The notes under the pieces were generated by a model. It ran no database searches and was not told where the DNA came from. It worked only from the letters and a program-made list of their open reading frames with translations. A program made the position numbers and the translations under genes. This document shows, piece by piece, positions 2,595 through 46,122 of a DNA stretch of 64,000 bases. Location of the stretch: positions 62,001 to 126,000 of the IMG/VR virus record IMGVR_UViG_3300035703_000008; one strand, given 5' to 3'. Every line of letters starts with the position of its first letter. Position 1 is the stretch's first letter.

Positions 2595-3911
2595 ATGAAT
2601 CGCAAAGACACCTTCTGTATACTGCCTTTTGTGGGCATGAACGTGCATATCAATGGAGGTCTCACTCCATGCTGTTATCAAGATCGCGGACCCGATGTCA
2701 AATATCGATTCCAAGACTACCAACAATGGCGCCAAGAAGGTCTCGCAGATCTTAAACGAGATCTCCTCACCGGAGTGAGAAACAGCCAATGTCGGCGATG
2801 CTGGGACGAAGAAGATGCCGGTGCTGACAGTTACCGACAGCAACACAACAAACAATACCCCAACCATCCAGCCTGGAAGATCGACGTCACTGAGCCGGGA
2901 TGGGAAAATCTCATCTATGATTTTCGCATGCTACATCTTGAATTTGACAGTCTTTGCAATCTAAGATGCATCATGTGTCACCCCACGGTGAGCACCAGTC
3001 TCGAGACTGAATACAAGCTCAATGCCGATCGATATCAGCCCTTTACCGGAATACTAAATTTTGAAAAAATCAAGTGGACCGAGACCGAACAATTTGAAAA
3101 ACTACTGTCGGCCTTGCAAAACGTAGACACTCTCATGGTCACCGGAGGCGAGCCTCTCACCAATCCCACATTCATACGACTGCTAAAGTCATTTCCCAAT
3201 CTCGAAGAACTCAATATATCAGTGACCACTAATGCCACTGTGATCAAGGACGATGTATACGAATTACTGAGTCGGGCCAAGACCAGTTCCATCACTGTGA
3301 GCTTGGAAGGCATTGGTGCCCACAACGATTATCTGCGGCACGGCAGCGACTGGGACACCGTGGATGCCAACATACAAAAACTGGCACAATTACCTAACTG
3401 GCGATGGATACCCATCAATATAGCCACTGTTTTACAATATACCAGTCTCTGGAGCTTGTCACCATTGATCGACTACTGTATAGAACGCGGCTACAATCTC
3501 CGGATCAACCATCTGCATCACCCTGACTATCTCACATTGTCGTGCATGGAAGACAAGGAACGCAAGAAATTCGTTGCCCAGCTACGCAAGAAATTCAAGG
3601 GACTTTATATAAGTCGTAGGGAGCCACGTGGCAAACAAATCACCTATGCCATAGACACCTTACTGAACACCGAATTTAATTCCAAATCTCGAGAAAAGTT
3701 TTTTTCTTATGTTGGCATGCTAGACAGCGTGAGAGGTACCAAGTTCCATGAAATATTTGACATCAACGAAAAGAGATCCAAATGTCAAAAATCAGTATCC
3801 CCGACGTCATTGAATTCGTCAATCAGCAAGGACCCAACACCCGCGTTTATCTCGGGGCCGATTCAGAACGATTCCGCGAACGCGGAGTCTGGTGGGCCGA
3901 ATACACCGTAG
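2595..3911 (+). CDS. radical SAM protein with an N-terminal twitch/SPASM-like Cys cluster
   Basis: CNLRCIMC, TGGEP, and N-terminal FCILPF...PCC...CRRC. The C-terminal tail overlaps the next gene by 130 nt. Confidence 0.88.
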   Translation: MNRKDTFCILPFVGMNVHINGGLTPCCYQDRGPDVKYRFQDYQQWRQEGLADLKRDLLTGVRNSQCRRCWDEEDAGADSYRQQHNKQYPNHPAWKIDVTEPGWENLIYDFRMLHLEFDSLCNLRCIMCHPTVSTSLETEYKLNADRYQPFTGILNFEKIKWTETEQFEKLLSALQNVDTLMVTGGEPLTNPTFIRLLKSFPNLEELNISVTTNATVIKDDVYELLSRAKTSSITVSLEGIGAHNDYLRHGSDWDTVDANIQKLAQLPNWRWIPINIATVLQYTSLWSLSPLIDYCIERGYNLRINHLHHPDYLTLSCMEDKERKKFVAQLRKKFKGLYISRREPRGKQITYAIDTLLNTEFNSKSREKFFSYVGMLDSVRGTKFHEIFDINEKRSKCQKSVSPTSLNSSISKDPTPAFISGPIQNDSANAESGGPNTP

Positions 3912-4252
3912 TGGTAGTGATACATATCAACGGCAACAACGGCTGCCGTATTTTCGGCGAAGTCACTAGAGAACGCGACTATGATCAACGGCAGGATCGT
4001 CCCAGCATGCGTCTCATGAACGAAGTATATCGTGTCAGTGAGCTGTTCCAGAATCTCGCACCAGCCCTGACAAATCGCGAAGTGGAAGTGCATCTTGACA
4101 TCAATCCCAACGAGCTGCATGGAAGTTCTTGCGTGATACAGCAAGCCATCGGCTATATAAGAGGTACCTGCAATGTGATCCCCATGGTCAAACCGCAGGC
4201 ATTCGCGGCCAGCTATGCAGCTGACCGATTCCGCAATCTCAAAGTAGCATAA
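3782..4252 (+). CDS. RNase H-like protein (YkuK/DUF458 family)
   Basis: VYLGADS, YTVVVVIH, RLMNEV, EVHLDINP, GSS, AADR motifs. Confidence 0.8.
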   Translation: MSKISIPDVIEFVNQQGPNTRVYLGADSERFRERGVWWAEYTVVVVIHINGNNGCRIFGEVTRERDYDQRQDRPSMRLMNEVYRVSELFQNLAPALTNREVEVHLDINPNELHGSSCVIQQAIGYIRGTCNVIPMVKPQAFAASYAADRFRNLKVA

Positions 4253-4262
4253 AGGAAACATC

Positions 4263-4651: not shown

Positions 4652-4658
4652 AAGTATT

Positions 4659-4733
4659 GCTGGATTAGCTCAGGGGTAGAGCAACCGCCTTGTAAGCGGT
4701 AGGTCGTCAGTTCGAATCCGACATCCAGCACCA
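4659..4733 (+). tRNA. tRNA-Thr(UGU)
   Basis: Acceptor GCTGGAT/ATCCAGC, anticodon arm ACCGC-CTTGTAA-GCGGT, TTCGAAT, CCA. Confidence 0.96.
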
Positions 4734-4750: not shown

Positions 4751-4906
4751 ATGCCCATCAAAGGACTCAAAGAAATCCTGGAAAAGAAACGCGGTAACAC
4801 CGTGCCCGGGGAGAAAACCCCCGATGCCACGGACCGTGGTCCGGCACCCAAGTCACCAGTGCAAAGCAACAAACCCGCTCGTCGCGCTGCGGGTCGAGGT
4901 CGTTAG
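4751..4906 (+). CDS. small basic, low-complexity hypothetical protein, 51 aa
   Basis: Manual ORF MPIKGLKEILEKKRG...KPARRAAGRGR*. AGGT upstream; the stop overlaps the next GTG. Confidence 0.55.
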   Translation: MPIKGLKEILEKKRGNTVPGEKTPDATDRGPAPKSPVQSNKPARRAAGRGR

Positions 4907-5934
4907 TGAGCTATCAAGAAACCTATCAAGGCGAGATCTTCGTCAAGAGCGGTTGCTTGGATCACGAATATCATCTCCTGGAAAGCATCAGAGCCATGCT
5001 GATCAAGGCTGGTTGGATCAGCCAAGATCCACGCCGCTTGATCTGGCAACGCGATCACCGACGTGCATGGTTGGCCATAGTAGACGACATCGAGTCCATA
5101 CCCGAACATTCGCACGAAGATTTCCTGGCCACTCTGGGGCACGATGATCTAGTGATCACCGACAACTTTATCGCACGTCCTGTCCGGGCCCGTGTGATCG
5201 AGCTGCCACGATCCTGGTTTGGCATCTATGCCTATCGGCCCGAGATCACTGTCGACGAGCCTGATCGCGACTATGGATTTGCTGTGAACCGCCTGGATGC
5301 CGTGCGTGCCCAGATACTCTTGGAGATGCAGCAGTGGCGCCACCTCAGTGGTGTACAAGGCTATGTGAATTTCAACTGTGCTAGCCATGCCCTGGACCAG
5401 ACCTATCAGCAAAAACGCGAGCTATGGGCACGGGTGTGCGAAGATCTGCGCGCCTGGCATGAAGATCGCTATGATCGAGCTATTCGCGACATTGATACCT
5501 TGATACCATTCCGCAACCACGACCTCGAGCTGGAGCAGGTCATGCAACGATCTTTGCTCAATGTCATCGTTGAGACCTACAGCAGCGACTACTCAGTGAG
5601 CGTGAGTGAAAAGATATTCCGCGCTTTGGTCACACCGCGACCATGGACCGTGTTTGGCGGCATGTGGACCGTGGCCCGACTGGAACAACTGGGCTTTGAT
5701 TGCGTGAGAGACATAGTGGATCACAAAACCGATGCCATGAAAAGCACCGAAGACCGCATCAAAGAATTCGTTCGCAACTCGGCCAATCATTGGCGCAGCC
5801 TGGTGTGGTCAGAAATCAAAGATCGCTGTGAACAGGCTGCACAACACAATCAAGCAGTGCTGGCCAGCATGCGTGAGCAGTGGCCCACAGATCAGGCCCG
5901 GTTCTTGCAAGAATTACAGCCGTTGCTGGCTTAA
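4906..5934 (+). CDS. glycosyltransferase-like protein (VIVET...SEKIF family, GT10-like motif)
   Basis: LNVIVETY...VSEKIFRAL..PRPW..FG......L.QLGFD, shared with the 30061, 31157, 38780 and 43590 paralogues. Confidence 0.6.
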   Translation: MSYQETYQGEIFVKSGCLDHEYHLLESIRAMLIKAGWISQDPRRLIWQRDHRRAWLAIVDDIESIPEHSHEDFLATLGHDDLVITDNFIARPVRARVIELPRSWFGIYAYRPEITVDEPDRDYGFAVNRLDAVRAQILLEMQQWRHLSGVQGYVNFNCASHALDQTYQQKRELWARVCEDLRAWHEDRYDRAIRDIDTLIPFRNHDLELEQVMQRSLLNVIVETYSSDYSVSVSEKIFRALVTPRPWTVFGGMWTVARLEQLGFDCVRDIVDHKTDAMKSTEDRIKEFVRNSANHWRSLVWSEIKDRCEQAAQHNQAVLASMREQWPTDQARFLQELQPLLA

Positions 5935-6516: not shown

Positions 6517-6669
6517 AGTTATACACGATGCTGTGGTGTAAATAAAGAAGACTTCGCAGGGGGATGCGCCCGGCAGCTCTGGATCTATCTGCCGGAATCG
6601 TTTGCACGGTGAGACTCCGTGAGAACAGTGGCAGTTCCTACACGCCCTGGGAGATGCCATAAATAAGGT

Positions 6670-10414: not shown

Positions 10415-11862
10415 ACTTTGCTGAATTTATTTTTGATCGGGTACGAAATCATGCTGGTGTGGCCTATTATTGCGGCGACCAGCAACTGTTGTTTCGAGAC
10501 CTCGAACCCCGAGTGAGAGAAACTGCTGGCTTCCTTGGCAGCCAGGGTGTGGATCATCACAGCACTGTGATGATCAATCTTCCCAACAGCCCCGAGTGGC
10601 CGGTGATATTTTATGCTCTTACCTTACTGGGTGCCCGGATCATGGTCACCCATGCCAATCTCGATCCGATCAGCCTCAAAACCATCGCTGCCAGGATCAA
10701 GTCCACACACATCATCGCTGTGACTGAGCGGGATCTAGGTCCGATCAATGTGTTGCTAGAACACATAACACATGACAGATCGGGATTTTTTTACAACGGC
10801 AGTCATGACTACAACGATGATGATCTGCACTTCATGATCACCACATCGGGCACCAGCGGTCGGCAGAAGATCGTCAAGCATCGCCATATTTCTTGTGTGA
10901 ATCTTTGTCGCGAGTTTGACCGTCGTGAAACCATCTATCAGGACCTCGATGAGTCGTCGGTGATCCTGTGTACAGCTAATCTAAACTTTCTCTACGGTCT
11001 TGGCACCTGTGTTTGTCTAGGTCCCAGCCAGGGTGTGCCCACCGTGATCTTCGACCAAACTCTCACTCCCAAAAATATCATCGGGTTGGCCAATCGATTC
11101 CGAGTCACACATCTGTTCAGTGGCCCAGCTGGGTACATGCTGATGACCAAGTATCCCGGAGACGACCTCCTACCCGACTCTGTCAAGTGTTGCGTGTCCG
11201 GCGGAGAGAAACTGCTGGCCAGCGTGTCCAGAGAATTTGAAAACAAGTTTGGACATCGAGTCTACGACTGCATCGGATGCAGCGAGTTGTTTTGGTTTTT
11301 TCTCGGGGAATGGTCTGGCAACATCAGATCCGGCAGCATGGGTCGGCCTTTCCCCGGGCACGATATCAAGGTGGTCAATGCCGACGGTACTCCGTGTCCG
11401 GTTGGCGAAATTGGCTACCTTGTGGTCAAGACCAACGTGATCAGTGCTGGTTATTTTGACGATGCTGAAGGCAACAGATTCAGCTTCCGCGACGGATGGT
11501 TTTGGACCAATGATCTCGTCAAGGTTGACGAGGATGGATACTTCTTTTATCTGGGCCGGCACGGACAACTGCACAAGGTGCACGGGATCTGGGTCAATCT
11601 CCTGGAAGTGGAAGACTATGTGAGTGCCTTGCCGGAAATCACCGACTGCCTGGCCAAGTTCGTGATCGACGATCGTGGACTGGTCGAAGTGGAAGCACAG
11701 GTAGTGACATCTCTGCAGGAGCCAGCAGCTGACATACGCCGTCGGCTACTGGAGATAGTTCCGCCCTGCCAGATGCCAAAATTTGTTACCTTGGTCAATG
11801 AAATACCTCGCACCATGAACGGCAAAAAAATACGTGATCTCGCTATCATCAATCAATCATGA
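10411..11862 (+). CDS. AMP-forming acyl-CoA ligase, benzoate-CoA-ligase-like, copy 2
   Basis: TTSGTSGRQK, YDCIGCSE, GSMGRPFPG, DGWFWTNDL, KVHGIWVNLLEVE, IPRTMNGKKIR. Start taken at the ATGA overlap (10411) rather than the ORF-track start 10387. Confidence 0.88.
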   Translation: MNFAEFIFDRVRNHAGVAYYCGDQQLLFRDLEPRVRETAGFLGSQGVDHHSTVMINLPNSPEWPVIFYALTLLGARIMVTHANLDPISLKTIAARIKSTHIIAVTERDLGPINVLLEHITHDRSGFFYNGSHDYNDDDLHFMITTSGTSGRQKIVKHRHISCVNLCREFDRRETIYQDLDESSVILCTANLNFLYGLGTCVCLGPSQGVPTVIFDQTLTPKNIIGLANRFRVTHLFSGPAGYMLMTKYPGDDLLPDSVKCCVSGGEKLLASVSREFENKFGHRVYDCIGCSELFWFFLGEWSGNIRSGSMGRPFPGHDIKVVNADGTPCPVGEIGYLVVKTNVISAGYFDDAEGNRFSFRDGWFWTNDLVKVDEDGYFFYLGRHGQLHKVHGIWVNLLEVEDYVSALPEITDCLAKFVIDDRGLVEVEAQVVTSLQEPAADIRRRLLEIVPPCQMPKFVTLVNEIPRTMNGKKIRDLAIINQS

Positions 11863-12590
11863 TCAAATCGCGCCCTTTGATTTTCATCGGTTCTCGATAC
11901 TACATGAACGATCTAGCCATCACAGCCGAGCTCATGGGTCTGGAAGTGCTGGGAATACTGGATCATCAGTATCACGGCAACACCGACGAAATTTCGAGCA
12001 TACCAGTGATCGGCAGCGATCACTGGTTGCTGGATCCCGAGAATCGAGAAGCACGAGTCTGGAAAAACACCTGTGATTTTTTTGTAGCCACACTGGACAC
12101 CGGTGAGCAAGAACGTGATCCAGCGAAAAATCGCACTCGACTCCGACAACAACGAATCAACATGCTCGAAGAGCTGGCACTTGGCACTGTCAATCTCATT
12201 GATCCTGAATCGCGCATCGTGCGCGATCAACGGTCGAGATTCTCACGTATCTCTCTGGGTCGCGGCATTTATGTGGCTCCGTTCGTGGACATCAATCACG
12301 AAGTAGTGATAGGCGACTTTTCCACCTTTGAGCATCAGAGCTATATCGGACATCATATCACCATCGGCAAGAACGTCACAGTATTGCCCACTGCTCGTAT
12401 ATGCCACTGCGACATCGGTGATCACGCTGTGATTGGCTACGGGTCCTGGACTAGACACGACGAACGCAAGAGTCGCTATCGTATAGGTTCTAGAAGCACA
12501 GTGTGGAGCCACACCTGTATCGATCGAAGCTGCCCCGACGATCATGTCTATACCAATGTTGGTAAGATTTTACGGAAAAGATCGGTATAG
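11859..12590 (+). CDS. NeuD/PglD-like sugar acyltransferase (left-handed beta-helix)
   Basis: N-terminal Rossmann-like LIFIGS...LEVLGILD, then hexapeptide repeats (ISLGRGIYV, VVIGDFSTF, ITIGKNVTV, CDIGDHAVIG). ATGA-coupled. Confidence 0.8.
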   Translation: MIKSRPLIFIGSRYYMNDLAITAELMGLEVLGILDHQYHGNTDEISSIPVIGSDHWLLDPENREARVWKNTCDFFVATLDTGEQERDPAKNRTRLRQQRINMLEELALGTVNLIDPESRIVRDQRSRFSRISLGRGIYVAPFVDINHEVVIGDFSTFEHQSYIGHHITIGKNVTVLPTARICHCDIGDHAVIGYGSWTRHDERKSRYRIGSRSTVWSHTCIDRSCPDDHVYTNVGKILRKRSV

Positions 12591-36423: not shown

Positions 36424-37562
36424 CGTGCGATAATTTTTACTTGTTGTTCTCGATAGTCGGGATCGCTCCAGTGGTAATCGTACTCGCAACGAGCATCGCT
36501 GGTGGTCACTGACCACACATCGAGGTGATTGTCTAACATGGTCCAAATACGGCCGGCATCCGACGTACCAAAGCTACGATCGAGATCTACCTGTCCCACT
36601 TGTGGATGTCCGATAGTGAGACTCTTGTCTTCGGGGTCAAATCCATTGTCGCGAAGCCATCCACGGAAATCATCGAGACGATCTCGCTGCCACGGGAACT
36701 CGCCGGGATCCTTGCCCCACTCAATGTCAAAGTCAGCCGCAGCTTCGGTCTGGCTACGAAGGGTGGTGCTTACCAGTTCGCCGAGTCGGCTGTCGCGTCC
36801 TTCGTCGTTGAACACTTCCCAGTGGTGCTTGCCCACGGCCTTGTTCACGCCCACGAACACTCCGCCCAGGCTGCGATTGATAGTATCAACTCCGAACAGT
36901 TCGTAGTCTTCCTCATCGAGCACAAACCTCGGTGCATGCAACCAGCACATCAGTGTGCTGGGACGTTGCCATTCAGGAGCTTCGATCTCCTTGCGCCAGC
37001 TCAGGGCCCAGGATTCGAACTCGTGACACAAGAGATTCAGTTGTCTGATGTGCCAGCGCGTGGCTGGATCTGCTTTCAAGAAAAACTCGCTCATGGATCC
37101 ACTCACACCTTGAAGGTCTTCAAAGTATCTGTGCAGCCAATTGAATCGATCGTGGATGATATTGCGTCCCACATTGCGACCTGGCTCTGTGGGTTTATCG
37201 GTGATCACTGTCGACATGGTGAAATGATCGTCGATGTGATATCCAATGTTGGCAGCGTTGATGGCAGCGATACTGGCATTGACTTGATCCAGGATGTACC
37301 ATCCGTTGCGCTCGTGGTTAGTGAAACCAAAAAAGCAGTAGTTCTTTTCGAGATGCCGCTGATCGTCGAGAACATTGTTTAGAGCTGCCAGCCATTTGCG
37401 ACTGAGGCTGTTATCATAGACATCCACGTAGGTTTTAAGTAGATCGCCGGTGCGATGATCTCGCAATTCAAGCTCGACTACATCAAGCAGGTATTTTTTT
37501 CCACCAATCATATATTTCCTTGTCATTTTCTTCAAGTATGCGTTCAAGTGTGAAAGTGTCAT
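36420..37562 (-). CDS. hypothetical protein in the radical SAM cluster (start uncertain)
   Basis: 380-aa ORF. The true start is probably near 37490-37525, at the stop of the upstream radical SAM gene. Confidence 0.7.
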   Translation of the reverse strand: MTLSHLNAYLKKMTRKYMIGGKKYLLDVVELELRDHRTGDLLKTYVDVYDNSLSRKWLAALNNVLDDQRHLEKNYCFFGFTNHERNGWYILDQVNASIAAINAANIGYHIDDHFTMSTVITDKPTEPGRNVGRNIIHDRFNWLHRYFEDLQGVSGSMSEFFLKADPATRWHIRQLNLLCHEFESWALSWRKEIEAPEWQRPSTLMCWLHAPRFVLDEEDYELFGVDTINRSLGGVFVGVNKAVGKHHWEVFNDEGRDSRLGELVSTTLRSQTEAAADFDIEWGKDPGEFPWQRDRLDDFRGWLRDNGFDPEDKSLTIGHPQVGQVDLDRSFGTSDAGRIWTMLDNHLDVWSVTTSDARCEYDYHWSDPDYREQQVKIIAR

Positions 37563-38793
37563 TGCGTATATGCTCGAGCTTCAATACACGTTGTTTGCCT
37601 CGAGTCAAGGCTGCTTGCCATTCCCCGGGCCATTGTTGTTCGAATGTGGGACGATTCTTGAGCTGCAGCAAAACATCTTTGAGAGCACCATTGGGCATGC
37701 CCGCGGTAAGTGTGTCTACCCTGGCATCCAATAGCTCACGAGGTAAAGCCAAAGGACTCATGACGATGTCGGGCGTAAAAGAAAATATCACTTTGGCCAG
37801 GATTTCCACGCCCATCTCCTGTGCCAAGGACTGTATGCGATCCACTTCAAACAAGCCCGGCAATGTGAGGGTAAAGTCGATCCTCATTTGCCGCGGATGC
37901 TGCGCGATGTCTCGACCTTGTTGGAAATGCTGTCGCCATTGCTGGTAGTCCAATCCTGTGCGGATGTATTCTCCAATCGCTCCAGTTCCATCCAGACTCG
38001 CGCAGATTTGCCAGTCTCGGATATGCCGGAGTATATCACTATAAAGGTTGACACCACGGTAATCAACCCTACTAAGATTAGTATTATATCTTGCATAGAC
38101 ACGCGGTCCATCTCCCAGTTCTACTATCCGCTGCATGTAGCGCCAGTGTTGTTCGTACATGAGGGGCTCACCACCCACCCAGTAGATCTCCTCCACACGG
38201 TGTTGCTCCACAGCTTCGGCGAATTCTCGCTCGATCTGCTCGTCCTGGAATCTGGTGATCTCTCGTTTGACTTCGGGGCGCATCCAGGTATTCTTGGGAT
38301 TGGCCCAGTCGATCATGTCGTGCTGTCTCTGTTCAGTTTCCCAGGCCGAGCTCAGCATGTCGCCGCAGGTCCTGCACTTGAAGTTGCAGAGATTTGAGAA
38401 TCTATAATCCCAGCTCACGGGCTGCATGCTGGTGCGCCCGTCAGCGTCGGTGGTTGCCCAGATGTCGTCGTACTTGTGCCGGAAAAGATGCCAGAAATAA
38501 GTGCGGTAGACATCAGTATTTAACAAACGATTGTTACAAACGTCGCACTCAGGCAAGGTTTCTCCGGCCATCATCCTACGACGCACTGATCGCATGTGCT
38601 CTGAATTCCAGTGCTGATCCAGGGTCAAAGGAATGTAGCGACCAGTGCCTGCGGCTGTGTCGATGTACTGCTGGAAGTTTTGGGCAGGCTCGCGACTGGC
38701 GCAGCACATCCTGCGTTCGGTCTGTGGACTCAGATAAGTGTGAGTCCACGGTGCCATGCACAGGGTATCGGGTCGTTGATCAGGAGGTAGCAT
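37483..38793 (-). CDS. radical SAM protein with an N-terminal twitch-like cluster
   Basis: CNFKCRTC, VGGEP; N-terminal LCMAPW...MCC...CDVC. Confidence 0.9.
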   Translation of the reverse strand: MLPPDQRPDTLCMAPWTHTYLSPQTERRMCCASREPAQNFQQYIDTAAGTGRYIPLTLDQHWNSEHMRSVRRRMMAGETLPECDVCNNRLLNTDVYRTYFWHLFRHKYDDIWATTDADGRTSMQPVSWDYRFSNLCNFKCRTCGDMLSSAWETEQRQHDMIDWANPKNTWMRPEVKREITRFQDEQIEREFAEAVEQHRVEEIYWVGGEPLMYEQHWRYMQRIVELGDGPRVYARYNTNLSRVDYRGVNLYSDILRHIRDWQICASLDGTGAIGEYIRTGLDYQQWRQHFQQGRDIAQHPRQMRIDFTLTLPGLFEVDRIQSLAQEMGVEILAKVIFSFTPDIVMSPLALPRELLDARVDTLTAGMPNGALKDVLLQLKNRPTFEQQWPGEWQAALTRGKQRVLKLEHIRNDTFTLERILEENDKEIYDWWKKIPA

Positions 38794-39760
38794 ATTCTAG
38801 TACCGGGCGTATTACACGATCAAAGTATCTTCCCATTACAAAATCATGGTTCCAAAAATGTTGTCGATTATGTTCGATCCTGTCCAGGGTCTCCCGATCG
38901 TATCCGCGATCAAGGTCGATTACATCCAAGTTACTCAACATGAGTTTTACACGATCGTACATGTCATTTATTTTATCGTAGCTCTCATCAAATATATTGT
39001 CGAATGTGACAAATCCCAGCGACTTGATATACTCCAAGGTGCCAGGGCAGGCTTGGATCAAAAACGGATGACAATAAGCGATGGGCTTAAAAGTTTTTTC
39101 AGTGATCCATGGACCAGCGCCGATGTAGGTCTCTGATACCACTGAACAAAAGGTCTTGTTATACCAGTCCCACTTTACGTACCTATCATTGAAATAGTGA
39201 AAAAGAGTTTCATGGTCCACGTCCCCAGGTAGAAAGATATTTTCGTCGTTGAAACTCCAGATCATGCGATCCAACCAAGGACCGGCTAGTTCTTTTAACA
39301 TACGCCGATGAAAACGAGTCTTTCGAATCGGCATCAATGCTAATTTTTCAAGTTGAAGGTCCCAGACTCTCAGATTTTCATAATGCTGATTATTCACATA
39401 CTCATTGTACCAAAAATACTCTTGGCATTCTAAAATATACCACCCGTCTTGGACGGCCTCACCGATGTTGTAGTTGAGAGCGATAGAATCGTCGTCGTCG
39501 CGGGGAGCTAGCCACGACGGTATCTCCCAGAGATTATCGAGAATCACCCGGTGACCATTGCTTCTTAGTTCTTTGAGTATGGGAGTCGGGCCATGTATGA
39601 TGCTAGAAATAAAAACTGTGTTTTTTTTATCGTAATGCCGGTTGGCATCATAAATCTCGATATTGAAATACTGCTGCCAGATTTTCCTGTGATGATCAAC
39701 GATCATCGACGGAGCCGGGTACTCCATTTCTCGAAACCAGATCAACTTGGGCTTGGTCAT
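38780..39760 (-). CDS. glycosyltransferase-like protein (TEKTFKP family)
   Basis: SVVSETY...WITEKTFKPIAYCHPF...YIKSLGFVTFDNIFDESYD. AT-rich. Confidence 0.65.
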   Translation of the reverse strand: MTKPKLIWFREMEYPAPSMIVDHHRKIWQQYFNIEIYDANRHYDKKNTVFISSIIHGPTPILKELRSNGHRVILDNLWEIPSWLAPRDDDDSIALNYNIGEAVQDGWYILECQEYFWYNEYVNNQHYENLRVWDLQLEKLALMPIRKTRFHRRMLKELAGPWLDRMIWSFNDENIFLPGDVDHETLFHYFNDRYVKWDWYNKTFCSVVSETYIGAGPWITEKTFKPIAYCHPFLIQACPGTLEYIKSLGFVTFDNIFDESYDKINDMYDRVKLMLSNLDVIDLDRGYDRETLDRIEHNRQHFWNHDFVMGRYFDRVIRPVLEYATS

Positions 39761-40983
39761 CTACTGGGACCCGAGTACTCAATCGCTGCAGCCAATTCAG
39801 GATGATGATCGCAGAGATTTTGTTGGCGCTTCCAGTCAAGGTCTTCTACCTTCATCCTCAAGATGCTGCCATCGAGGCTGACACCACGCTCAATGAATTC
39901 AATCACTCGATCAAATTCAGCACGATGTCTGGCAGTGACCTGTGCCGATTTCAAGCGATCGATCACTGCTGATTTAGCAGCATCAGGCAGGGTGCCCACT
40001 GAAAAGTAGTAGGCTTCGTGCATCATATTCCAATACACAAAGTCGAAACCTTGCTGGTCAATCCAGTTGGCCAATCCTTCGAGATACATAACGTTAAAAA
40101 CATTTATAGTACTACAGACCTGTAGCTGTATGCGGCCAGGATGTCGAGATCTGAGATCCCGGAATCGCTGCAGATTTTCTTGCACCTCAGACCAAACAGC
40201 GTTGGTTCTTTGATATTCAAATCTCTCATCAAGGTCATCGATGCTGAATGCGATCTCTACTGTCTTGAAATGCCGCCAGATCTCTTCGGCTTCCTCAGGC
40301 CACTGAGTGCCGTTGGTGTTGTAGTGTATTTCTACGTTGCCGGCAATGCCACGCTCAACGATGCCACGCAAGAGTTGGAAGTGCTCGCGGATCATGAAAG
40401 GTTCACCACCGGTGAATTCGATGTAGCGGATCTGATCGATGATGGTGTCGATCTGGCTCCAGAACGTTTCGTTTTCCTTGGGCCAGGCACCCTTCTTCAG
40501 CATGGTGTAGTGGAAACTCTTTTTCTTGGTTTCTTCGTCGCGACTCACATATGTGAGCTCTTCCACGGCGAATGTACTGGAACTCCAGGACCCACAAATC
40601 CTGCATTTGAGATTGCAGATGTTGCCCAGCTTGAGATCAAGGAACATGAGAGGTTTGGCATCCACAGTCCACTCTTCGTCGGGGATCATGTGCTTGAGTC
40701 GATCCAAGGTATGCATGCGTTTGCTGGTACGGCCAGCACGTTCTTCGTTCCAGCACTTGCGGCAGGTGCGTGGCTTTTTGGCATCAAGGAACTCTTGGCG
40801 CAGCTGGATCATGTATCGACTCTGCTGTACTTGTCCGAGATCGGCTGTGCTGAGTTCAAACTTTTCTCCGGCATCGTCCACGATCTCTTCTTCGGCCAAG
40901 CAGCAAGGACGTACGGTACCGATCGGTGATGTTTCTAGGCTCACCCATGGTAGTACACAAAATTTGTCGTGTGGTATTTTCAT
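39757..40983 (-). CDS. radical SAM protein with an N-terminal twitch-like cluster
   Basis: CNLKCRIC, TGGEP; FCVLPW...PCC...CRKC. Confidence 0.9.
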   Translation of the reverse strand: MKIPHDKFCVLPWVSLETSPIGTVRPCCLAEEEIVDDAGEKFELSTADLGQVQQSRYMIQLRQEFLDAKKPRTCRKCWNEERAGRTSKRMHTLDRLKHMIPDEEWTVDAKPLMFLDLKLGNICNLKCRICGSWSSSTFAVEELTYVSRDEETKKKSFHYTMLKKGAWPKENETFWSQIDTIIDQIRYIEFTGGEPFMIREHFQLLRGIVERGIAGNVEIHYNTNGTQWPEEAEEIWRHFKTVEIAFSIDDLDERFEYQRTNAVWSEVQENLQRFRDLRSRHPGRIQLQVCSTINVFNVMYLEGLANWIDQQGFDFVYWNMMHEAYYFSVGTLPDAAKSAVIDRLKSAQVTARHRAEFDRVIEFIERGVSLDGSILRMKVEDLDWKRQQNLCDHHPELAAAIEYSGPSR

Positions 40984-42269
40984 CTCAGTGCCTCAAGTTC
41001 GGGGATGACATCTAGTAGGTTTTCGTTACGGATAGCATCCAGTTGCGCTGTTTTCTGCCAGAACTTTGGAATAAGAGCGGAGTTATCGGTGGCGTTCATA
41101 AATGCGATAGCTGATTCAAACCCCACTGTGGCTCTCTGCAAAGGATCTTGTGGGCGCAACCAATCAAGATGCTGATTAAATCTTTCAGTGAGTTTGATCT
41201 TGTAGTCAGGTGTGGCTATGTCGATTCGATAGTATTCAGGATCCTGCAGGATGTTTACATTGAGATCCTGCGGACGCAGCAGGCCTTTTTCGACCCAGTC
41301 TCTGTGGAACTCTGGCAGATGCCAGGCATTCATGATCGACAGCGTGGGAGAAATATAGAAGTCAACATCAGGACAGGTGTCCATCATCCTGCGACGATTT
41401 TCTTCGACCACGTTCCAACGGGTGCCTTTACGGATGTATTCTCCGCGAGCGCCCGAGTCATCGAGGCTGGCACCCACGGCCACTGATTTGAATTTTTTCC
41501 AATAATCAAACACGTAGCGATCTTTGAGTTTGACTTGTGTAAAGTTAGTATTGTAGATCAACCGTACATCAAATCTCCCACGCCGTTCCAGTTCGTCGAG
41601 GATGCGATAATGCTCGTCCATCATGAGAGGCTCGCCGCCGGCAAAATAGATCTGTTCCACATAGTCTAGATGCCCAGTCAGTTGTTCCCAGATATCAGTT
41701 TCGTGTCTCCCAGCATAGTTCAGGACTTTGTTGTTTTTGGCCCAATCACCGCCGGCCAGCTGTGCTTGATCCTGGAACCAAGAACTGGAAAAGATGTGCC
41801 CACAGCTACGGCAACTGAGATTGCAGAGATTGGAAAATCTCACGTCCCAGTAGGTCATCTTGAAATCTTCGTAGTGTCCGTCTCTGGCAGTGCGATCGGT
41901 GCGATCGATGTGATGTCCATGATGCTTGTTGGCGCTCTGGCGTCCACTGAAGAACCCTGATTTTTCTTGTTCGTAGCAGCGAGTACAATATGGATTCTTT
42001 CGTCCGTCCAACATGTCTCGGCGCAACTGTTTCATCTTATCGGAGTTCCAGATCTCTTGCATGCTGTTGTCTCGACAACTGCCCATGGGTCCAGCACGCA
42101 TCTCGGCATGGCAGCAAGGCCATGCTTCGCCGGTGGGATAGGCATGCATGTGGATCCAAGGATACATGCAGAAAGTTTTTGACTCACTGAGCAAAAATCG
42201 CTTGTGATCGCTGATGTCGTCGAGCTTGATCTTGATAGGATCAGCTGAATTGTAGTTGTATTGAGTCAT
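40980..42269 (-). CDS. radical SAM protein with an N-terminal twitch-like cluster
   Basis: CNLSCRSC, AGGEP; FCMYPW...PCC...CTRC. Confidence 0.9.
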   Translation of the reverse strand: MTQYNYNSADPIKIKLDDISDHKRFLLSESKTFCMYPWIHMHAYPTGEAWPCCHAEMRAGPMGSCRDNSMQEIWNSDKMKQLRRDMLDGRKNPYCTRCYEQEKSGFFSGRQSANKHHGHHIDRTDRTARDGHYEDFKMTYWDVRFSNLCNLSCRSCGHIFSSSWFQDQAQLAGGDWAKNNKVLNYAGRHETDIWEQLTGHLDYVEQIYFAGGEPLMMDEHYRILDELERRGRFDVRLIYNTNFTQVKLKDRYVFDYWKKFKSVAVGASLDDSGARGEYIRKGTRWNVVEENRRRMMDTCPDVDFYISPTLSIMNAWHLPEFHRDWVEKGLLRPQDLNVNILQDPEYYRIDIATPDYKIKLTERFNQHLDWLRPQDPLQRATVGFESAIAFMNATDNSALIPKFWQKTAQLDAIRNENLLDVIPELEALR

Positions 42270-43599
42270 ACCAATCTTTCAGTCGTGGAAAAGTCGCGGC
42301 AAAGTCTTTGCCGCGACGTTGATCATACTGTTGATAAAACAAGCGAAAATCGTTGTGCAGTTTAGACATCTCGAATGCATCAGAATGCGGAGTCTTGACC
42401 ACATCAAGGTAGTCAACTAGTCTCTGTAAATGATTGATCTCGTGCTCGTGCATGTAATCACAACCTTTGTGGCGCACCATAAATTCAGCGAGACGATCCT
42501 TGTAATAGCTGCGCAATTCATCGGGCAGCACCAATGGCGATTGGAAGCTAGGGAACCGCAGGATGTTTAAGGTAAAGTTCACACGTTCGCGGCCGTACTG
42601 CTTTTTGAATTCGATCACTTGTTCGAGATACTCAGGCAAGCTGTCTAGACACAGGGCATTGATGGTACACATACTGTGTACGGCACGTATGTGATCGTGC
42701 TCTAGTAATTCTCGCATGTTGCCTAGCCAAACATTATAATCGATACCGTCTCGTATGTATTCGCTTTGTGCACCAACCGCTTCGTTGCTGGTATAGATTT
42801 CCACATGAGACAACCCAGCTACGCTGTCCAGGAACTCTAGGAGCCTTTCCTTTTCCAAGGCGAGGTTAGAGTTGATGGCCAATTTCGTCGAGCAGCGACC
42901 TTGATTCTCCTTGAACCAGTCAAGTAACTGCCACATATAGCCGGACATGAGCGGTTCGCCGCCGGTGATGCGTAGTTCTTCGAGCGTACGGTGTAGGTCT
43001 GATTCCCACCACTCAAAGAACGCGCGGATATATGGATTATCCTCACCAAAGCGATATAACTGGGCACTATCATGAGTGTGAGTAAAATGGTTTCGACCAT
43101 CAGATACCAGTCCCCGATAAGGACCGGAATTCTTAATATCCTTAACCCATGTACTAGAAAAAGCAGGATTACAGTAAGAGCAAGCCAGTTGGCAAGTGCG
43201 ATCAAAGGCAATTTCCAGCGTGCGGAGATTGACATCCACGCTTGGATCAAGTTGGCTTGCATGATGTAGAGTCTGGATCGGGTAGATTCGGCTTTTATAT
43301 ACGCGATCTGATATTGCGTCCCGCCCCATGTCTTCAATCTTCCAGCAATACTCGCAACCAGGTGGTCTTCGACCCGCTTGCATGTCAGCTCGATCTTGTT
43401 TTTTAGCTGGTGTATTGTGGAGAGCACGTGGATTGATCTGGACATCTTCTATACTTATTTTGTGTGCGGGAGGATGGTGGCAGCTGGTGGTCATACCGGA
43501 GCCGAGCCAAATGGTGGCATTGTACCATTTGGCGCCACAAAAACTGTCGGATATGGTGTCTAGCACCTGTTGTCGGAATTCTAGATCGTTCATTGGCAA
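42241..43599 (-). CDS. radical SAM protein with an N-terminal Cys/His cluster
   Basis: CQLACSYC, TGGEP; FCGAKW...SCHH...CEYC. Confidence 0.9.
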   Translation of the reverse strand: MPMNDLEFRQQVLDTISDSFCGAKWYNATIWLGSGMTTSCHHPPAHKISIEDVQINPRALHNTPAKKQDRADMQAGRRPPGCEYCWKIEDMGRDAISDRVYKSRIYPIQTLHHASQLDPSVDVNLRTLEIAFDRTCQLACSYCNPAFSSTWVKDIKNSGPYRGLVSDGRNHFTHTHDSAQLYRFGEDNPYIRAFFEWWESDLHRTLEELRITGGEPLMSGYMWQLLDWFKENQGRCSTKLAINSNLALEKERLLEFLDSVAGLSHVEIYTSNEAVGAQSEYIRDGIDYNVWLGNMRELLEHDHIRAVHSMCTINALCLDSLPEYLEQVIEFKKQYGRERVNFTLNILRFPSFQSPLVLPDELRSYYKDRLAEFMVRHKGCDYMHEHEINHLQRLVDYLDVVKTPHSDAFEMSKLHNDFRLFYQQYDQRRGKDFAATFPRLKDWYDSIQLQFS

Positions 43600-44756
43600 T
43601 GGGGTTGGGTAAACTTCTGTAGTCGATCGGGAAACTCGGCCTGAATCTGTGGCACGAGTGCATTCAAGTGTTGCTGATTGTATTTACACACCTCTCGACA
43701 AGCATCAAGGAAAGCCGAGAGGTCTTGGCGACAAAGATCCTCGACAATGTCGGTGATGCGTTCAACTCGTGCCTGATTGTCGTCGATGAGATCAAAACTT
43801 TCATCAATGACATGGTTGAATGTACGGAATCCTAGATCCTGCATGTCGCGATAAAAGCCTCGGTTGGCCACTGCTATCCAAGGGTGTGCCATGGCCAAGG
43901 GCTTGGCTATTTTCTCGGTGCGGAAACTATAGGGATAATCAAACACTGTTTCTGTGATCAAACTGAAATAGGTATCGATATAGGGTTCAGGACGGAGATA
44001 GATTTCGCCCCAGTCATCACCAAATAGATGGAACTTGACAAACTGAACTCCTTGAGGCACGGGTTCAGCTAGTTTAGCACGATATGTGTCAACTTCATAG
44101 TTTTCTGGCAAATACTGTACGGGACGATCCTCTAGCATGAGATTGCGCCCGTCTTGTTCCAGTCGAAGAATGCGACTGTTAAATCCTTTTCCTTCGAGAC
44201 AACTCCATAGACTCTGATCCAGCAGTCCCGAACTACGGAATCGTTCCATGAGATACTTGCGATGTGGTCGTGCCCGACCATTCAGGAACAGGAACTTGTA
44301 GGGCTTGATCTTTTTCTTGAAGATTTCACCTGACAACAAAAATGCCGAATGATTTTCGTGATATTTTAGGACTTGGGCCAGGAATGCATCATAACGTAGA
44401 CATGTGTAACCGGGTTCCATGTCTCCGCCGCCGATTACCAGTATGTGTCCTGCTAGTATGAGATCTTCCAGGCCCATCATGCGCATCTGCCAACGAAAGG
44501 TTTCTGATCCCTCGGCTGGATTGCTGATGATTACCAATGATCCTGGTCGTTGGGCTAGATCTCGCACCTTGGATGTGTTTTCTTTGCACTGCTGTCGTCC
44601 AATGAGATAGATGCTGTTGTCTACTGGTTCATGGGAAGAGAAATCCCAGAATTCGATGTCGGCTAGATGCGCTATCAGCTCGTAGACTTCGCAGTGAGTA
44701 TCGATGATGAGTTTACGACCGTTGAGCATGTGCTCTGCACTCCTCCCACCAGGCAC
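43590..44756 (-). CDS. glycosyltransferase-like protein (TEKxxKP family)
   Basis: FSLITETVF...RTEKIAKPLAMAHPW...DLGFRTFNHVIDESFD. Start probably at MLNGRK. Confidence 0.65.
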   Translation of the reverse strand: MPGGRSAEHMLNGRKLIIDTHCEVYELIAHLADIEFWDFSSHEPVDNSIYLIGRQQCKENTSKVRDLAQRPGSLVIISNPAEGSETFRWQMRMMGLEDLILAGHILVIGGGDMEPGYTCLRYDAFLAQVLKYHENHSAFLLSGEIFKKKIKPYKFLFLNGRARPHRKYLMERFRSSGLLDQSLWSCLEGKGFNSRILRLEQDGRNLMLEDRPVQYLPENYEVDTYRAKLAEPVPQGVQFVKFHLFGDDWGEIYLRPEPYIDTYFSLITETVFDYPYSFRTEKIAKPLAMAHPWIAVANRGFYRDMQDLGFRTFNHVIDESFDLIDDNQARVERITDIVEDLCRQDLSAFLDACREVCKYNQQHLNALVPQIQAEFPDRLQKFTQPHCQ

Positions 44757-46122
44757 GCATCTCAGGGAACGTGGCTAGAAAATTGGTGCCACGACGGCGA
44801 TCATGTTCGTTGAAAAATCTATAGAAGTCGGCCCGGGCCACAATGTTGTCTTGTTCTTGGCCTCGACGCATCCAAGCAAGATCCCGATCCAGACGCTGGC
44901 ATTCGTAGTCTTTGAAGCCCTGAAAACGTGTGGCTTCGGTTTCTTGGTTGGTCAGCATCCAGTCACGTATACGCTCCACCCGGGCGGCATAGCTCTCGGG
45001 CAGGATCTGCAGGCTCTGCCAGGCAGGTTGTCGCAGTACAGGTGTGTCAAACCAAACTCGCTGATAGGTCTTGCTGTGACGTCGGCGTAGATTCAGGATC
45101 TCGGCCAGGAATCGATCCAGGCTGGTCACTGATAGATTGTTCATGGTGATGATGAATGTGAGGCTGCTGCGATATGGAACTTGTTCAAGGAACTGTTCCA
45201 CTCGGCTCCACATGAGATCAAAGTCCAGACCATGCCGCATGTATTCAGCCTGTGATCCCCAGCCATCCACGCTGACATATTGCATGTAGTGTTCTACACG
45301 ATCCTGTTCGGTGATGCGTTTGACATAGTCGAGATATCGATCAAACAGTTTCTGCTCCACTGAGAAATTGGATGTGACATTGAGATGCAGTCGGGGATTG
45401 AGATGTTCCAACACATAATCAAACACACGATAGGTGTTGCGGTCCATCAATGGCTCGCCGCCGGTCATGCGGAAGTGTTCCAGTTCAGGATACAGGTCCG
45501 GCCACCAGCGCCAGAATGCTTCCACATATGGATTGTGTTCTCGATGTGGGATAGGTCTGCGTTCGCCTTCGAAATGAGTGAGTTGGTTGTGCGGCACACT
45601 GGTAGGGTAAGCACCTTCGCGCTGTATCTCGTCCATCCAACTGCTGGAGAATTGCGGGCTACAATAGCTGCACCGGAGATTACATGCCGAGTTGAAATTG
45701 ACTTCTACATAACTGGGTGTGGCATCTTGGTCCCAGGGCGCCGACATGATGGCATGGAAATCTCGTGCTGCCCAGGGCTCGCCAGATCTGTAATGACGAT
45801 CACTGAGCTTGCCATTGTCCTCCATGTTCCAGCAGTATTGACATTCTGGGGGACGTTGACCTTGTTTCATCATCAGACGCTGTTGCTTTTTATGGGCAGT
45901 GTTATGGATACCACTGGCGCTGCGACCGATATCCTCGAGAGTGATGCGATGCAAGGGAGGGTGATAGCAACTGTTGGTATGCCCTGTGGTGAGATGCAGG
46001 CTGACCTGTTTCCATTTGGCCAAGCACATGGCGTCGCCGAGGTCCTCCTTCATCTGCTCAGCGGAACTCAGAAACTTGCTCTTTCCTTCTTGTGTGACTT
46101 CGTCACCTTTGTTGTTTACCAA
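44713..46122 (-). CDS. radical SAM protein with an N-terminal Cys/His cluster
   Basis: CNLRCSYC, TGGEP; MCLAKW...SCYH...CQYC. Confidence 0.9.
   Translation of the reverse strand: MVNNKGDEVTQEGKSKFLSSAEQMKEDLGDAMCLAKWKQVSLHLTTGHTNSCYHPPLHRITLEDIGRSASGIHNTAHKKQQRLMMKQGQRPPECQYCWNMEDNGKLSDRHYRSGEPWAARDFHAIMSAPWDQDATPSYVEVNFNSACNLRCSYCSPQFSSSWMDEIQREGAYPTSVPHNQLTHFEGERRPIPHREHNPYVEAFWRWWPDLYPELEHFRMTGGEPLMDRNTYRVFDYVLEHLNPRLHLNVTSNFSVEQKLFDRYLDYVKRITEQDRVEHYMQYVSVDGWGSQAEYMRHGLDFDLMWSRVEQFLEQVPYRSSLTFIITMNNLSVTSLDRFLAEILNLRRRHSKTYQRVWFDTPVLRQPAWQSLQILPESYAARVERIRDWMLTNQETEATRFQGFKDYECQRLDRDLAWMRRGQEQDNIVARADFYRFFNEHDRRRGTNFLATFPEMRAWWEECRAHAQRS

What the first reader, a model, noticed from the sequence alone, without database searches (positions are those of the whole stretch)
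2595..46122. Six radical SAM paralogues with the auxiliary Cys cluster at the N-terminus, in two sub-types
Seen: genes at 2595, 37483, 39757 and 40980 have CxxP(W/F)...CC...CxxC before the CxxxCxxC core. Genes at 42241 and 44713 have CxAKW...SC(H/Y)H...C(E/Q)YC, where the second Cys of the pair is replaced by His or Tyr. Established: in anSME, BtrN and MoaA the SPASM/twitch cluster is C-terminal. Inference: a permuted radical SAM subfamily, expanded by duplication and interleaved with GT-like genes, probably each doing a different sugar oxidation or epimerisation.
Basis: partly seen in the sequence, partly recalled or inferred. Interest (0 to 1): 0.68.

Follow-up and report, generated by a model that had tools for sequence, protein, structure and literature searches.

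The report
Phage array of N-terminal-twitch radical SAM enzymes
The six genes are real radical SAM enzymes whose extra iron-sulfur domain sits at the front instead of the back, but they belong to an already named (uncharacterised) family, and they lie in a jumbo bacteriophage where 12-13 such enzymes sit among glycosyltransferases in what looks like a sugar-chain building and editing module.

Summary
Observation confirmed: all six ORFs carry the stated motifs. All six score 273-418 bits (cut-off 170) on NCBIfam NF033640, "twitch domain-containing radical SAM protein" (N_Twi_rSAM), so this domain order is already the norm of a curated but biochemically uncharacterised family. The N-terminal domain is homologous to the C-terminal twitch domain of BtrN. 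Four Cys are invariant. The second Cys of the "CC" pair aligns to a BtrN Phe and is not a predicted ligand, so both sub-types keep four ligands.

The window is part of a 209-kb T4-like jumbo phage record from a subsurface metagenome. It holds 12 family members plus a 13th N-SPASM rSAM. Related phage records hold 7-12 above the cut-off. The interleaved genes form a nine-member GT-B fold family. A syntenic module (GT2-like, rSAM6, variable GTs, rSAM5-4-3-2, carbamoyltransferase), downstream of a tail-fibre-like gene wherever the locus reaches that far, recurs in 19 of 22 related loci.

The paralogues were not made by recent duplication. Each has its own orthologue in Bdellovibrionota glycan islands (35-50% identity).

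Best reading (about 0.6): radical oxidation or epimerisation of sugars in a glycan pathway. The target is unknown.

The parts
2595..3911 (+). rS1: N_Twi_rSAM, CC sub-type, outside the main array
   Evidence: NF033640 273 bits; Pfam Radical_SAM
4906..5934 (+). GTe: member of the nine-copy GT-B-like family, next gene after rS1
   Evidence: all-vs-all blastp family; shared C-terminal motif
30061..31173 (+). GTc: GT-B-like family member
   Evidence: conserved in related phage loci
31157..32317 (+). GTd: GT-B-like family member
32314..33339 (+). u341: conserved unknown protein (75-87% identical in related phages); only a weak ETvFD-like motif match to the GT family
34103..35584 (-). O-carbamoyltransferase (NodU/CmcH type), conserved end of the module
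   Evidence: Pfam Carbam_trans_N and Carbam_trans_C; synteny; 31% identical homologue in a Bdellovibrionales island
36420..37562 (-). u380: unknown protein present in most related loci between rS2 and the carbamoyltransferase
   Evidence: no Pfam, PHROG or NCBIfam hit; synteny; unrelated to the GT family
37483..38793 (-). rS2: N_Twi_rSAM, CC sub-type
   Evidence: NF033640 282 bits; 1:1 orthologue in phage G002; 46.5% identical to a Bdellovibrionota chromosomal gene
38780..39760 (-). GTb: GT-B-like family member, present only in some related phages
39757..40983 (-). rS3: N_Twi_rSAM, CC sub-type
   Evidence: NF033640 326 bits; orthologue in G002
40980..42269 (-). rS4: N_Twi_rSAM, CC sub-type; the best-conserved copy and the one modelled
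   Evidence: NF033640 418 bits, Pfam SPASM 47 bits at residues 34-99; AF2 pLDDT 94, pTM 0.90; more than 7800 homologues, hundreds of clusters at 72-77% identity
42241..43599 (-). rS5: N_Twi_rSAM, CxAKW/SCHH sub-type
   Evidence: NF033640 303 bits; sub-type clade 100/100; about 50% identical to two Bdellovibrionota genes
43590..44756 (-). GTa: GT-B fold glycosyltransferase-like protein (modelled)
   Evidence: AF2 pLDDT 92, pTM 0.89; all top 50 PDB representatives are GT-B enzymes, Z 9.2-13.5 over the full length
44713..46122 (-). rS6: N_Twi_rSAM, CxAKW/SCYH sub-type
   Evidence: NF033640 315 bits; orthologue in G002; 35% identical to a Bdellovibrionota gene
46116..47039 (-). u307: conserved first gene of the module, probably GT2-like; resembles the C-terminus of the 1784-aa ORF
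   Evidence: 67-79% identical in most related phage loci (32-46% in the two most distant); Atlas score 0.99 to viral clusters auto-named 'Glycosyltransferase 2-like'; 38.5% identical full-length homologue beside an rSAM in a Bdellovibrionota island; blastp to ORF 24708-30062
50273..51808 (-). Tail-fibre-like protein upstream of the module on the same strand
   Evidence: PHROG tail fibre and virion structural families, Peptidase_G2 intramolecular chaperone domain; synteny
22696..24739 (+). NAD-dependent sugar epimerase/dehydratase and DegT-type sugar aminotransferase
   Evidence: Pfam
11859..12590 (+). Hexapeptide-repeat acyltransferase, a plausible amino-sugar N-acyltransferase
   Evidence: Pfam Hexapep
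462..1202 (+). Ferredoxin-NADP-reductase-like flavoprotein, a possible electron source for the rSAMs (inference)
   Evidence: Pfam FAD_binding_6 and NAD_binding_1

Best explanation
The six genes are intact members of the curated but uncharacterised family NF033640 (N_Twi_rSAM). In this family a single twitch-type auxiliary-cluster domain, homologous to the C-terminal twitch of BtrN, precedes the CX3CX2C radical SAM core. They lie in a T4-like jumbo phage that carries 12 such genes plus a 13th N-SPASM rSAM. Five of them form a tightly packed, same-strand module: GT2-like protein, rS6, variable GT-B genes, rS5, rS4, rS3, rS2, an unknown protein, then an O-carbamoyltransferase. The module sits downstream of a tail-fibre-like gene.

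Most likely mechanism (inferred): glycosyltransferases build an oligosaccharide or glycoside. Each rSAM cleaves SAM at its core cluster, and the 5'-deoxyadenosyl radical abstracts one specific sugar C-H. The fully Cys-ligated N-terminal cluster then takes or relays the electron. The result would be a keto-sugar (BtrN-like dehydrogenation) or, with H-atom return, an epimer (HygY/NeoN-like). Carbamoylation follows. The paralogues are old, functionally separate types shared with Bdellovibrionota glycan islands, not recent duplicates. The glycan's destination (virion fibres, host envelope, DNA or a free product) is not settled.
For: Shown:
- All six score 273-418 bits against a cut-off of 170, over their full length.
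- Four N-terminal Cys, the CX3CX2C Cys and the GGEP motif are invariant.
- The N-terminal profile aligns Cys for Cys with BtrN residues 166-237, and Pfam SPASM matches the N-terminus.
- The model is confident (pLDDT 94), with a hairpin and helices before the barrel. Its best structural neighbours are BlsE, CteB, anSME and SkfB (Z 12-12.8), matching the core only.
- The record holds 12 copies. Five related phage records hold 9-14 matches each, 7-12 of them above the family cut-off.
- Array members have 1:1 orthologues on short branches.
- The module is syntenic in 19 of 22 related loci, with variable GT cassettes.
- The interleaved family has the GT-B fold. u307 looks GT2-like.
- The window also encodes a carbamoyltransferase, a DegT aminotransferase, an epimerase/dehydratase and a hexapeptide transferase.
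- An independent bacterial context points the same way. 45 of 201 Bdellovibrionota genomes carry the family, often in arrays. These arrays sit beside GT2, GT-C (PMT_2), UDP-Glc/GDP-Man dehydrogenase, nucleotidyltransferase, sugar-kinase-like, SGNH and carbamoyltransferase genes.
- Specific orthologues of rS2, rS4, rS5, rS6, u307 and the carbamoyltransferase occur there.

From the literature: BtrN's four-Cys auxiliary cluster is proposed to act as an electron acceptor in a two-electron oxidation (PMC9012708). NeoN and HygY are sugar-epimerising rSAMs (HygY a twitch enzyme), and both depend on one critical Cys, shown to be the H-atom donor in NeoN (PMC10991966 and its reference list).
Against: - No enzyme of this family has been assayed, and no substrate is shown.
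- Cluster binding is inferred from homology.
- SPASM/twitch enzymes very often act on peptides.
- Several conserved module genes (u380, u341, u244, u287, u330) have no recognisable function.
- The GT-B family is rare in Bdellovibrionota (3 of 201 genomes), so the rSAMs do not depend on that particular GT family.
- No flavodoxin or Fe-S assembly gene was found in the record, which is about 60% complete.
- No RNA data are available.
Confidence: 0.6

Rival explanations
1. The rSAMs are protein or peptide maturases. They would install cross-links, epimerised residues or oxidised residues in phage structural proteins (the neighbouring fibre-like and giant proteins) or in an unrecognised RiPP precursor. 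The GTs would then glycosylate the same protein.
For: The closest structural and sequence neighbours include the peptide-modifying SPASM/twitch enzymes anSME, CteB, SkfB, SuiB and TigE. The module directly follows a tail-fibre-like gene and lies near ORFs of 4952 and 1784 aa.
Against: Pfam detects no RRE/PqqD-like peptide-recognition domain. The tightly packed operon leaves no obvious small precursor ORF. The bacterial counterparts sit among nucleotide-sugar and GT genes rather than protease or transporter RiPP sets. The sequence match of the auxiliary domain is to BtrN, a carbohydrate enzyme.
Confidence: 0.15
2. The module makes a free, exported glycoside natural product (aminoglycoside- or oligosaccharide-antibiotic-like) during infection, rather than a surface or virion glycan.
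For: The gene mix resembles aminoglycoside clusters (resemblance from memory): twitch rSAMs, GT-B enzymes, a DegT aminotransferase, an O-carbamoyltransferase, AMP-binding enzymes and an MFS transporter are all in the window.
Against: These genes are spread over about 45 kb on both strands and are not one cluster. No cyclitol or NDP-sugar synthase core was recognised. The module is co-oriented with structural genes. The bacterial islands contain a PMT_2/GT-C membrane transferase typical of envelope glycoconjugates.
Confidence: 0.1
3. The GTs and rSAMs hypermodify phage DNA with tailored sugars to evade restriction.
For: T4 beta- and alpha-glucosyltransferases and a phage GT are among the best structural matches of GTa (Z 12.6, 11.7, 11.9). 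The phage is T4-like by its capsid protein. Glycan hypermodification of phage DNA is known (bioRxiv 10.1101/2023.12.21.572611, listed).
Against: Those Z-scores are tied with dozens of unrelated GT-B enzymes. No ThyA-like pyrimidine hydroxymethylase was found in the record, although the record is only about 60% complete. The homologous bacterial islands look like envelope-glycan loci.
Confidence: 0.08

Closest known systems
NCBIfam NF033640, N_Twi_rSAM (twitch domain-containing radical SAM protein)
   Same: All six proteins match the model end to end, well above its curated cut-off. The domain order is the same: a four-Cys domain followed by CX3CX2C.
   Different: Nothing structural differs. 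The family itself has no assayed member that I could find. Here it occurs in a jumbo phage at 12 copies per record.
BtrN (butirosin 2-deoxy-scyllo-inosamine dehydrogenase), the archetypal twitch enzyme
   Same: The auxiliary domain is homologous. The four Cys align with BtrN's C169, the Cys of 'LPCF', C232 and C235. BtrN's cluster is ligated by four Cys (PMC9012708). Its substrate is a carbohydrate.
   Different: In BtrN the twitch domain follows the barrel; here it precedes it. These proteins are 410-470 aa against 250-270 and carry an extra helical C-terminal region. Only the N-terminal domain gives a significant sequence match.
HygY, NeoN and AviX12, radical SAM sugar epimerases
   Same: They carry out post-glycosylation radical tailoring of sugars. 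In NeoN a Cys donates the H atom, and in HygY one Cys decides between epimerase and dehydrogenase activity (PMC10991966 and its reference 3). This is the chemistry proposed here.
   Different: The resemblance is mechanistic inference only.
anSME, CteB, SkfB and BlsE (SPASM/twitch rSAM cores)
   Same: They are the best structural matches to the barrel (Z 12.0-12.8; Foldseek E about 1e-5).
   Different: The matches cover residues 136-400 only. Their auxiliary domains are C-terminal, and most of them act on peptides.
T4-like environmental viral genome TARA_ERS488813_N000010 (Nishimura et al. 2017, PMC5332604)
   Same: It was reported in passing as a 183-kb T4-like phage genome with 12 radical SAM genes, the same count and phage type as here.
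   Different: The paper treats them only as Fe-S-related auxiliary genes. It does not analyse family, architecture or context. I could not check whether it belongs to the same clade.
GT-B glycosyltransferases (GT10 fucosyltransferases, T4 BGT/AGT)
   Same: The interleaved nine-copy family has the two-Rossmann GT-B fold. Its E...TEK...KP motif recalls the GT10 nucleotide-sugar motif (from memory; Atlas lead at 0.79).
   Different: No Pfam GT model matches it, so it is an unclassified GT-B family that is almost entirely viral.

Membership tests
NCBIfam NF033640 N_Twi_rSAM | Whole-protein HMM score at or above the curated cut-off (170 bits), with full-length coverage | tested here: met
   273, 282, 326, 418, 303 and 315 bits, covering about 1-398 of 398 model positions
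NCBIfam NF033640 N_Twi_rSAM | Twitch-like Cys domain placed N-terminal to the CX3CX2C core | tested here: met
   Translations; invariant C34, C52, C95, C98 before C149, C153, C156
Radical SAM superfamily | CX3CX2C motif and a GGE-type SAM-binding motif | tested here: met
   Both are invariant in 12 paralogues, including GGEP. Pfam PF04055 passes its cut-off (29.5 bits) in three of the six, scores 29.0 and 18.5 bits below it in two, and does not match the 42241 gene
Radical SAM superfamily | Partial (beta/alpha)6 barrel fold | tested here: met
   AF2 pLDDT 94; Z 10-12.8 to many solved rSAM enzymes over residues 136-400
Radical SAM superfamily | Reductive cleavage of SAM to the 5'-deoxyadenosyl radical | not testable with these tools
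   Needs anaerobic enzymology
SPASM/twitch subgroup | Auxiliary domain homologous to SPASM/twitch (hairpin, then helix, with Cys ligands) | tested here: met
   Pfam SPASM 47 bits at residues 34-99 of the 40980 gene. The N-terminal profile's only significant PDB hit is the BtrN twitch domain, E 0.004 alone and 8e-8 with the full profile. Predicted strands 40-43 and 48-50 are followed by helices
SPASM/twitch subgroup | The auxiliary domain is a C-terminal extension of the barrel (PMC9012708) | tested here: not met
   The domain lies at residues about 30-130, before the core
SPASM/twitch subgroup | The domain binds an auxiliary [4Fe-4S] cluster | not testable with these tools
Needs Fe/S analysis, EPR or Mossbauer spectroscopy
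GT-B glycosyltransferases (interleaved genes) | Two Rossmann-like domains with the GT-B topology | tested here: met
   All top 50 of 48,161 PDB representatives are GT-B enzymes, Z 9.2-13.5, aligned over residues about 10-388. The Foldseek list is consistent
GT10 fucosyltransferases | Match to Pfam PF00852 (Glyco_transf_10) | tested here: not met
   No Pfam hit at E <= 0.001 for four family members; the fifth member in the window (4906-5934) was not scanned. Only an Atlas feature lead at 0.79 and FUT9 and H. pylori FucT among tied structural hits
RiPP-type rSAM maturases | RRE/PqqD-like leader-recognition domain | tested here: not met
   No such Pfam domain in any of the six
RiPP-type rSAM maturases | Adjacent precursor-peptide gene | not tested
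   Genes overlap tightly, with no gap for a precursor inside the array, but small ORFs were not searched systematically

The most novel reading that the evidence does not exclude
A radical glycan-editing assembly line carried by jumbo phages and shared with Bdellovibrionota. A fixed set of at least four or five non-redundant N-terminal-twitch rSAMs would each oxidise or epimerise a different position of a growing sugar chain after transfer. Swappable GT cassettes would vary the backbone. In this way the phage could make rare sugars without needing many NDP-sugar pathways, to decorate its fibres or to re-coat the infected cell. The CC and C(H/Y) sub-types might correspond to an epimerase and a dehydrogenase outcome, by analogy with the single-Cys switch in HygY.
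Probability: 0.3. Interest if true: 0.8.

Novelty: new member of a known kind. Interest (0 to 1): 0.55.

Why it matters
The family is large: more than 7800 homologues of one copy alone, present in about a fifth of the sampled Bdellovibrionota and in many jumbo phages. It has a curated name but no known reaction and no solved structure. A conserved five-enzyme array beside glycosyltransferases gives a concrete, testable setting for new radical carbohydrate chemistry. It would also add to the few known cases of phage-encoded complex glycan synthesis. For radical SAM enzymology, the family offers a natural test of whether a twitch cluster works the same way when the domain is placed before the barrel.

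Tried and rejected
- Pfam, PHROGs and NCBIfam gave nothing for most interleaved or flanking genes (u380, u341, u258, u244, u287, u330, the GT family, the 1784-aa ORF). Their roles rest on fold or remain unknown.
- hhalign of u380 against the GT family profile was negative. u341 gave only a 17-column motif match.
- Searches of the record for an A-type Fe-S carrier (PF01521), a flavodoxin (PF00258) and a ThyA-like hydroxymethylase (PF00303) found none. The record is about 60% complete, so this is weak evidence.
- I suspected that the Bdellovibrionales contig with an rSAM array was a misbinned phage. I rejected this: that genome has no T4-type capsid gene; arrays lie on megabase chromosomes beside BipA and Dus; and 45 of 201 genomes of the phylum carry the family.
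- I tested co-occurrence of the GT-B family with the rSAMs in Bdellovibrionota. Only 3 of 201 genomes have it, all rSAM-positive and one adjacent. That is too few for statistics.
- An exact look-up of a bacterial homologue in the contig index returned nothing on record.
- Literature searches for 'N-terminal twitch/SPASM', the family name and its accession found no description of this architecture or family. A review (PMC4326806) is not held.
- No RNA run holds the locus.
- Model coordinates are not exposed, so Cys-Cys and cluster-cluster distances could not be measured.
- Not used: read laying, complex prediction and the large representative search. Relatives were abundant, and no claim here rests on binding or on absence of relatives.

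Full report
**Observation**

The six ORFs translate without stops and show the reported motifs.
- Four have CxxP(W/F)...CC...CxxC ahead of CxxxCxxC: 2595-3911(+), 37483-38793(-), 39757-40983(-) and 40980-42269(-).
- Two have CxAKW...SC(H/Y)H...C(E/Q)YC: 42241-43599(-) and 44713-46122(-).
- A scan of the whole record with the family model finds exactly these six inside the window.

**What the proteins are**

All six match NCBIfam NF033640, N_Twi_rSAM ("twitch domain-containing radical SAM protein"). The matches cover the full length at 273-418 bits against a curated cut-off of 170. Pfam places its SPASM model at the N-terminus (47 bits at residues 34-99 of the 40980 gene, weaker in two others), with Radical_SAM behind it.

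A profile of the family hits the C-terminal twitch domain of BtrN with its first 70 positions. A profile of the N-terminal domain alone has BtrN as its only significant PDB hit (E 0.004). In that alignment:
- the first Cys pairs with BtrN C169;
- the first Cys of the "CC" pair pairs with the Cys of BtrN's "LPCF";
- the CxxC pairs with C232 and C235;
- the second Cys of the pair falls on BtrN's Phe.

Across the record's 12 paralogues, C34, C52, C95 and C98, the three core Cys and the GGEP motif are invariant, while C53 is not. Both sub-types therefore keep four candidate ligands, like BtrN, whose auxiliary cluster is ligated by four Cys and is thought to accept an electron (PMC9012708).

An AlphaFold model of the 40980 gene is confident (pLDDT 94, pTM 0.90). 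It shows a hairpin (40-43, 48-50) and helices before the barrel. Solved structures match only the core, residues about 136-400: BlsE Z 12.8, CteB 12.4, anSME 12.4, SkfB 12.0. So no solved structure matched beyond the core, and none of the matches has this domain order. I could not measure Cys geometry because model coordinates are not exposed.

The window is bases 62001-126000 of a 208,932-base IMG/VR virus record that CheckV rates about 60% complete.
- It has a T4-type major capsid protein (333 bits). The closest cultured capsids, at about 66% identity, belong to jumbo myoviruses such as Vibrio phage 2.275.O, PA5oct and Phosso.
- The only run holding the whole stretch, and the likely source sample, is labelled a subsurface metagenome.
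- The record holds 12 NF033640 members, a 13th N-SPASM rSAM below the cut-off and a B12-domain-like rSAM.
- Five related phage records of 160-316 kb give 9-14 matches each, 7-12 of them above the cut-off.
- One copy alone has more than 7800 homologues, with hundreds of clusters at 72-77% identity on contigs up to 328 kb. The nearest Atlas structure clusters are viral.
- A 2017 survey mentioned in passing a 183-kb T4-like environmental genome with 12 radical SAM genes (PMC5332604).

**The interleaved genes**

All-against-all comparison shows a second family of nine paralogues. Five are in the window: 4906-5934, 30061-31173, 31157-32317, 38780-39760 and 43590-44756. They share a C-terminal E...TEK...KP...GF motif and have no Pfam or PHROG hit.

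A model of the 43590 gene (pLDDT 92) matches only GT-B glycosyltransferases. All top 50 of 48,161 PDB representatives are GT-B enzymes, Z 9.2-13.5, over the full length (Foldseek agrees).

The gene at 46116-47039 resembles the C-terminus of the 1784-aa ORF. It also sits at 0.99 to viral clusters auto-named "glycosyltransferase 2-like".

The window further encodes an O-carbamoyltransferase, a DegT aminotransferase, an NAD epimerase/dehydratase, a hexapeptide transferase, two AMP-binding enzymes, an MFS transporter and an FNR-like flavoprotein.

**Module and synteny**

In 19 of 22 related phage loci the gene order is: u307, [variable GT or unknown genes], rS6, [GTa or variable genes], rS5, rS4, rS3, (GTb), rS2, usually u380 and the carbamoyltransferase where the locus reaches that far. 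Upstream, loci that extend that way show the fibre-like gene, u330, u287 and u244. In about half of the loci u341, GTd and GTc follow on the other strand. Three loci depart from this pattern: one is cut short and two have extra rSAM or GT genes inserted. The rSAMs are constant and the GT cassettes vary. Within the window the genes overlap or abut on one strand.

**Origin of the paralogues**

A tree of phage copies shows that each array member has a 1:1 orthologue in another phage on a short branch, and that the CxAKW sub-type is one clade (100/100).

Adding bacterial sequences breaks phage monophyly. At least five phage/bacterium switches are forced by well-supported branches. Specific pairs emerge:

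| Phage gene | Identity to Bdellovibrionota gene |
|---|---|
| rS2 | 46.5% |
| rS5 | about 50% |
| rS6 | 35% |
| rS4 | 35% |
| u307 | 38.5% |
| carbamoyltransferase | 31% |

The family passes its cut-off in 45 of 201 sampled Bdellovibrionota genomes, often in arrays on megabase chromosomes. Up to 11 rSAM genes lie in a row. These islands also hold GT2, a PMT_2 (GT-C) transferase, a UDP-Glc/GDP-Man dehydrogenase, a nucleotidyltransferase, a kinase, SGNH proteins and a B12-rSAM. "Expanded by duplication" in this phage is therefore not the right description. A set of old, distinct enzyme types travels together.

**Mechanism**

Shown: family membership, domain order, conserved ligand candidates, the GT-B neighbours, and a carbohydrate context in two independent kinds of genome.

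Inferred: each rSAM abstracts a particular sugar C-H. The N-terminal cluster handles the electron, giving dehydrogenation as in BtrN, or epimerisation as in NeoN and HygY, which both depend on one critical Cys, shown to be the H-atom donor in NeoN (PMC10991966 and its references). GTs and the carbamoyltransferase complete a glycan.

I put this at about 0.6. The rivals are:
- modification of proteins or peptides (0.15);
- a free glycoside product (0.10);
- tailoring of DNA glycans (0.08).

The last has weak support. T4 DNA glucosyltransferases are only tied structural hits, and no pyrimidine hydroxymethylase was found.

**Novelty**

The architecture is already captured by a curated family, so the subfamily itself is not new. 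I found no paper describing it or any assayed member. The RadicalSAM.org paper notes only that some SPASM/twitch-group members have N-terminal Cys sets without structures (PMC9477430). What is worth following is the conserved multi-rSAM plus GT module in jumbo phages and Bdellovibrionota. Cultured Vibrio phage K566 has four clustered members and could serve as a model.

**Limits**

There is no biochemical evidence and no expression data. The record is incomplete, and several module genes remain unassigned. I used neither read laying, complex prediction nor the large representative search.

Noticed in passing
window 6634-6987 (+): The phage carries a permuted (two-piece) tmRNA. It matches Rfam beta_tmRNA at 155 bits and tmRNA_permuted at 134 bits, and ARAGORN reads the tag peptide ANDEVFALAA. 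This may hint at a betaproteobacterial host rather than Bdellovibrionota.
   Followed up: partly
window 168-243, 1214-1287, 1333-1423, 2505-2579, 4659-4733 (+): Five tRNA genes (Arg-tct, Gly-gcc, Ser-gct, Val-tac, Thr-tgt) are scattered around the first rSAM gene.
   Followed up: no
window 52632-63998 (-), continuing to G000:C1:129490: A giant 4952-aa ORF lies upstream of the module on the same strand. It has an FG-GAP repeat match and shares short segments with other fibre-like ORFs of the record, so it is probably a virion fibre or tail protein.
   Followed up: partly
window 24708-30062 (-): A 1784-aa ORF has no Pfam hit. Its last roughly 190 residues resemble the GT2-like u307 protein, so it may be a large protein with a glycosyltransferase-like end.
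   Followed up: partly
window 7722-12590 (+): An MFS transporter, two AMP-binding (adenylate-forming) enzymes and a hexapeptide acyltransferase lie in a row. This is an unusual metabolic set for a phage.
   Followed up: no
window 15626-16717 and 18338-19627 (+): A MoxR-type AAA ATPase and a DUF2201 metallopeptidase/VWA protein form a MoxR-VWA-like pair inside the phage.
   Followed up: no
window 21794-22465 (+): A flavin-dependent thymidylate synthase (ThyX) is present. No ThyA-like gene was found in the record.
   Followed up: partly
G000:C1:144868-146259 (L008) and G000:C1:20383-21411 (L003): Two further radical SAM genes lie outside the window. One has a weak B12-binding domain match (a similar B12-rSAM sits in a Bdellovibrionota island). 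The other is a short N-SPASM rSAM below the family cut-off.
   Followed up: partly
L059 (G168:C1:1408000-1427999) and L057/L058 (G030:C1:2376000-2410000): Bdellovibrionota chromosomes carry islands with up to 11 consecutive radical SAM genes of several types. I found no description of them in the literature searches I ran.
   Followed up: partly
L064 (Vibrio phage K566, OZ196521.1:161548-168284): This cultured 255-kb phage has four clustered N-terminal-twitch rSAM genes. One of them is annotated only as hypothetical.
   Followed up: partly
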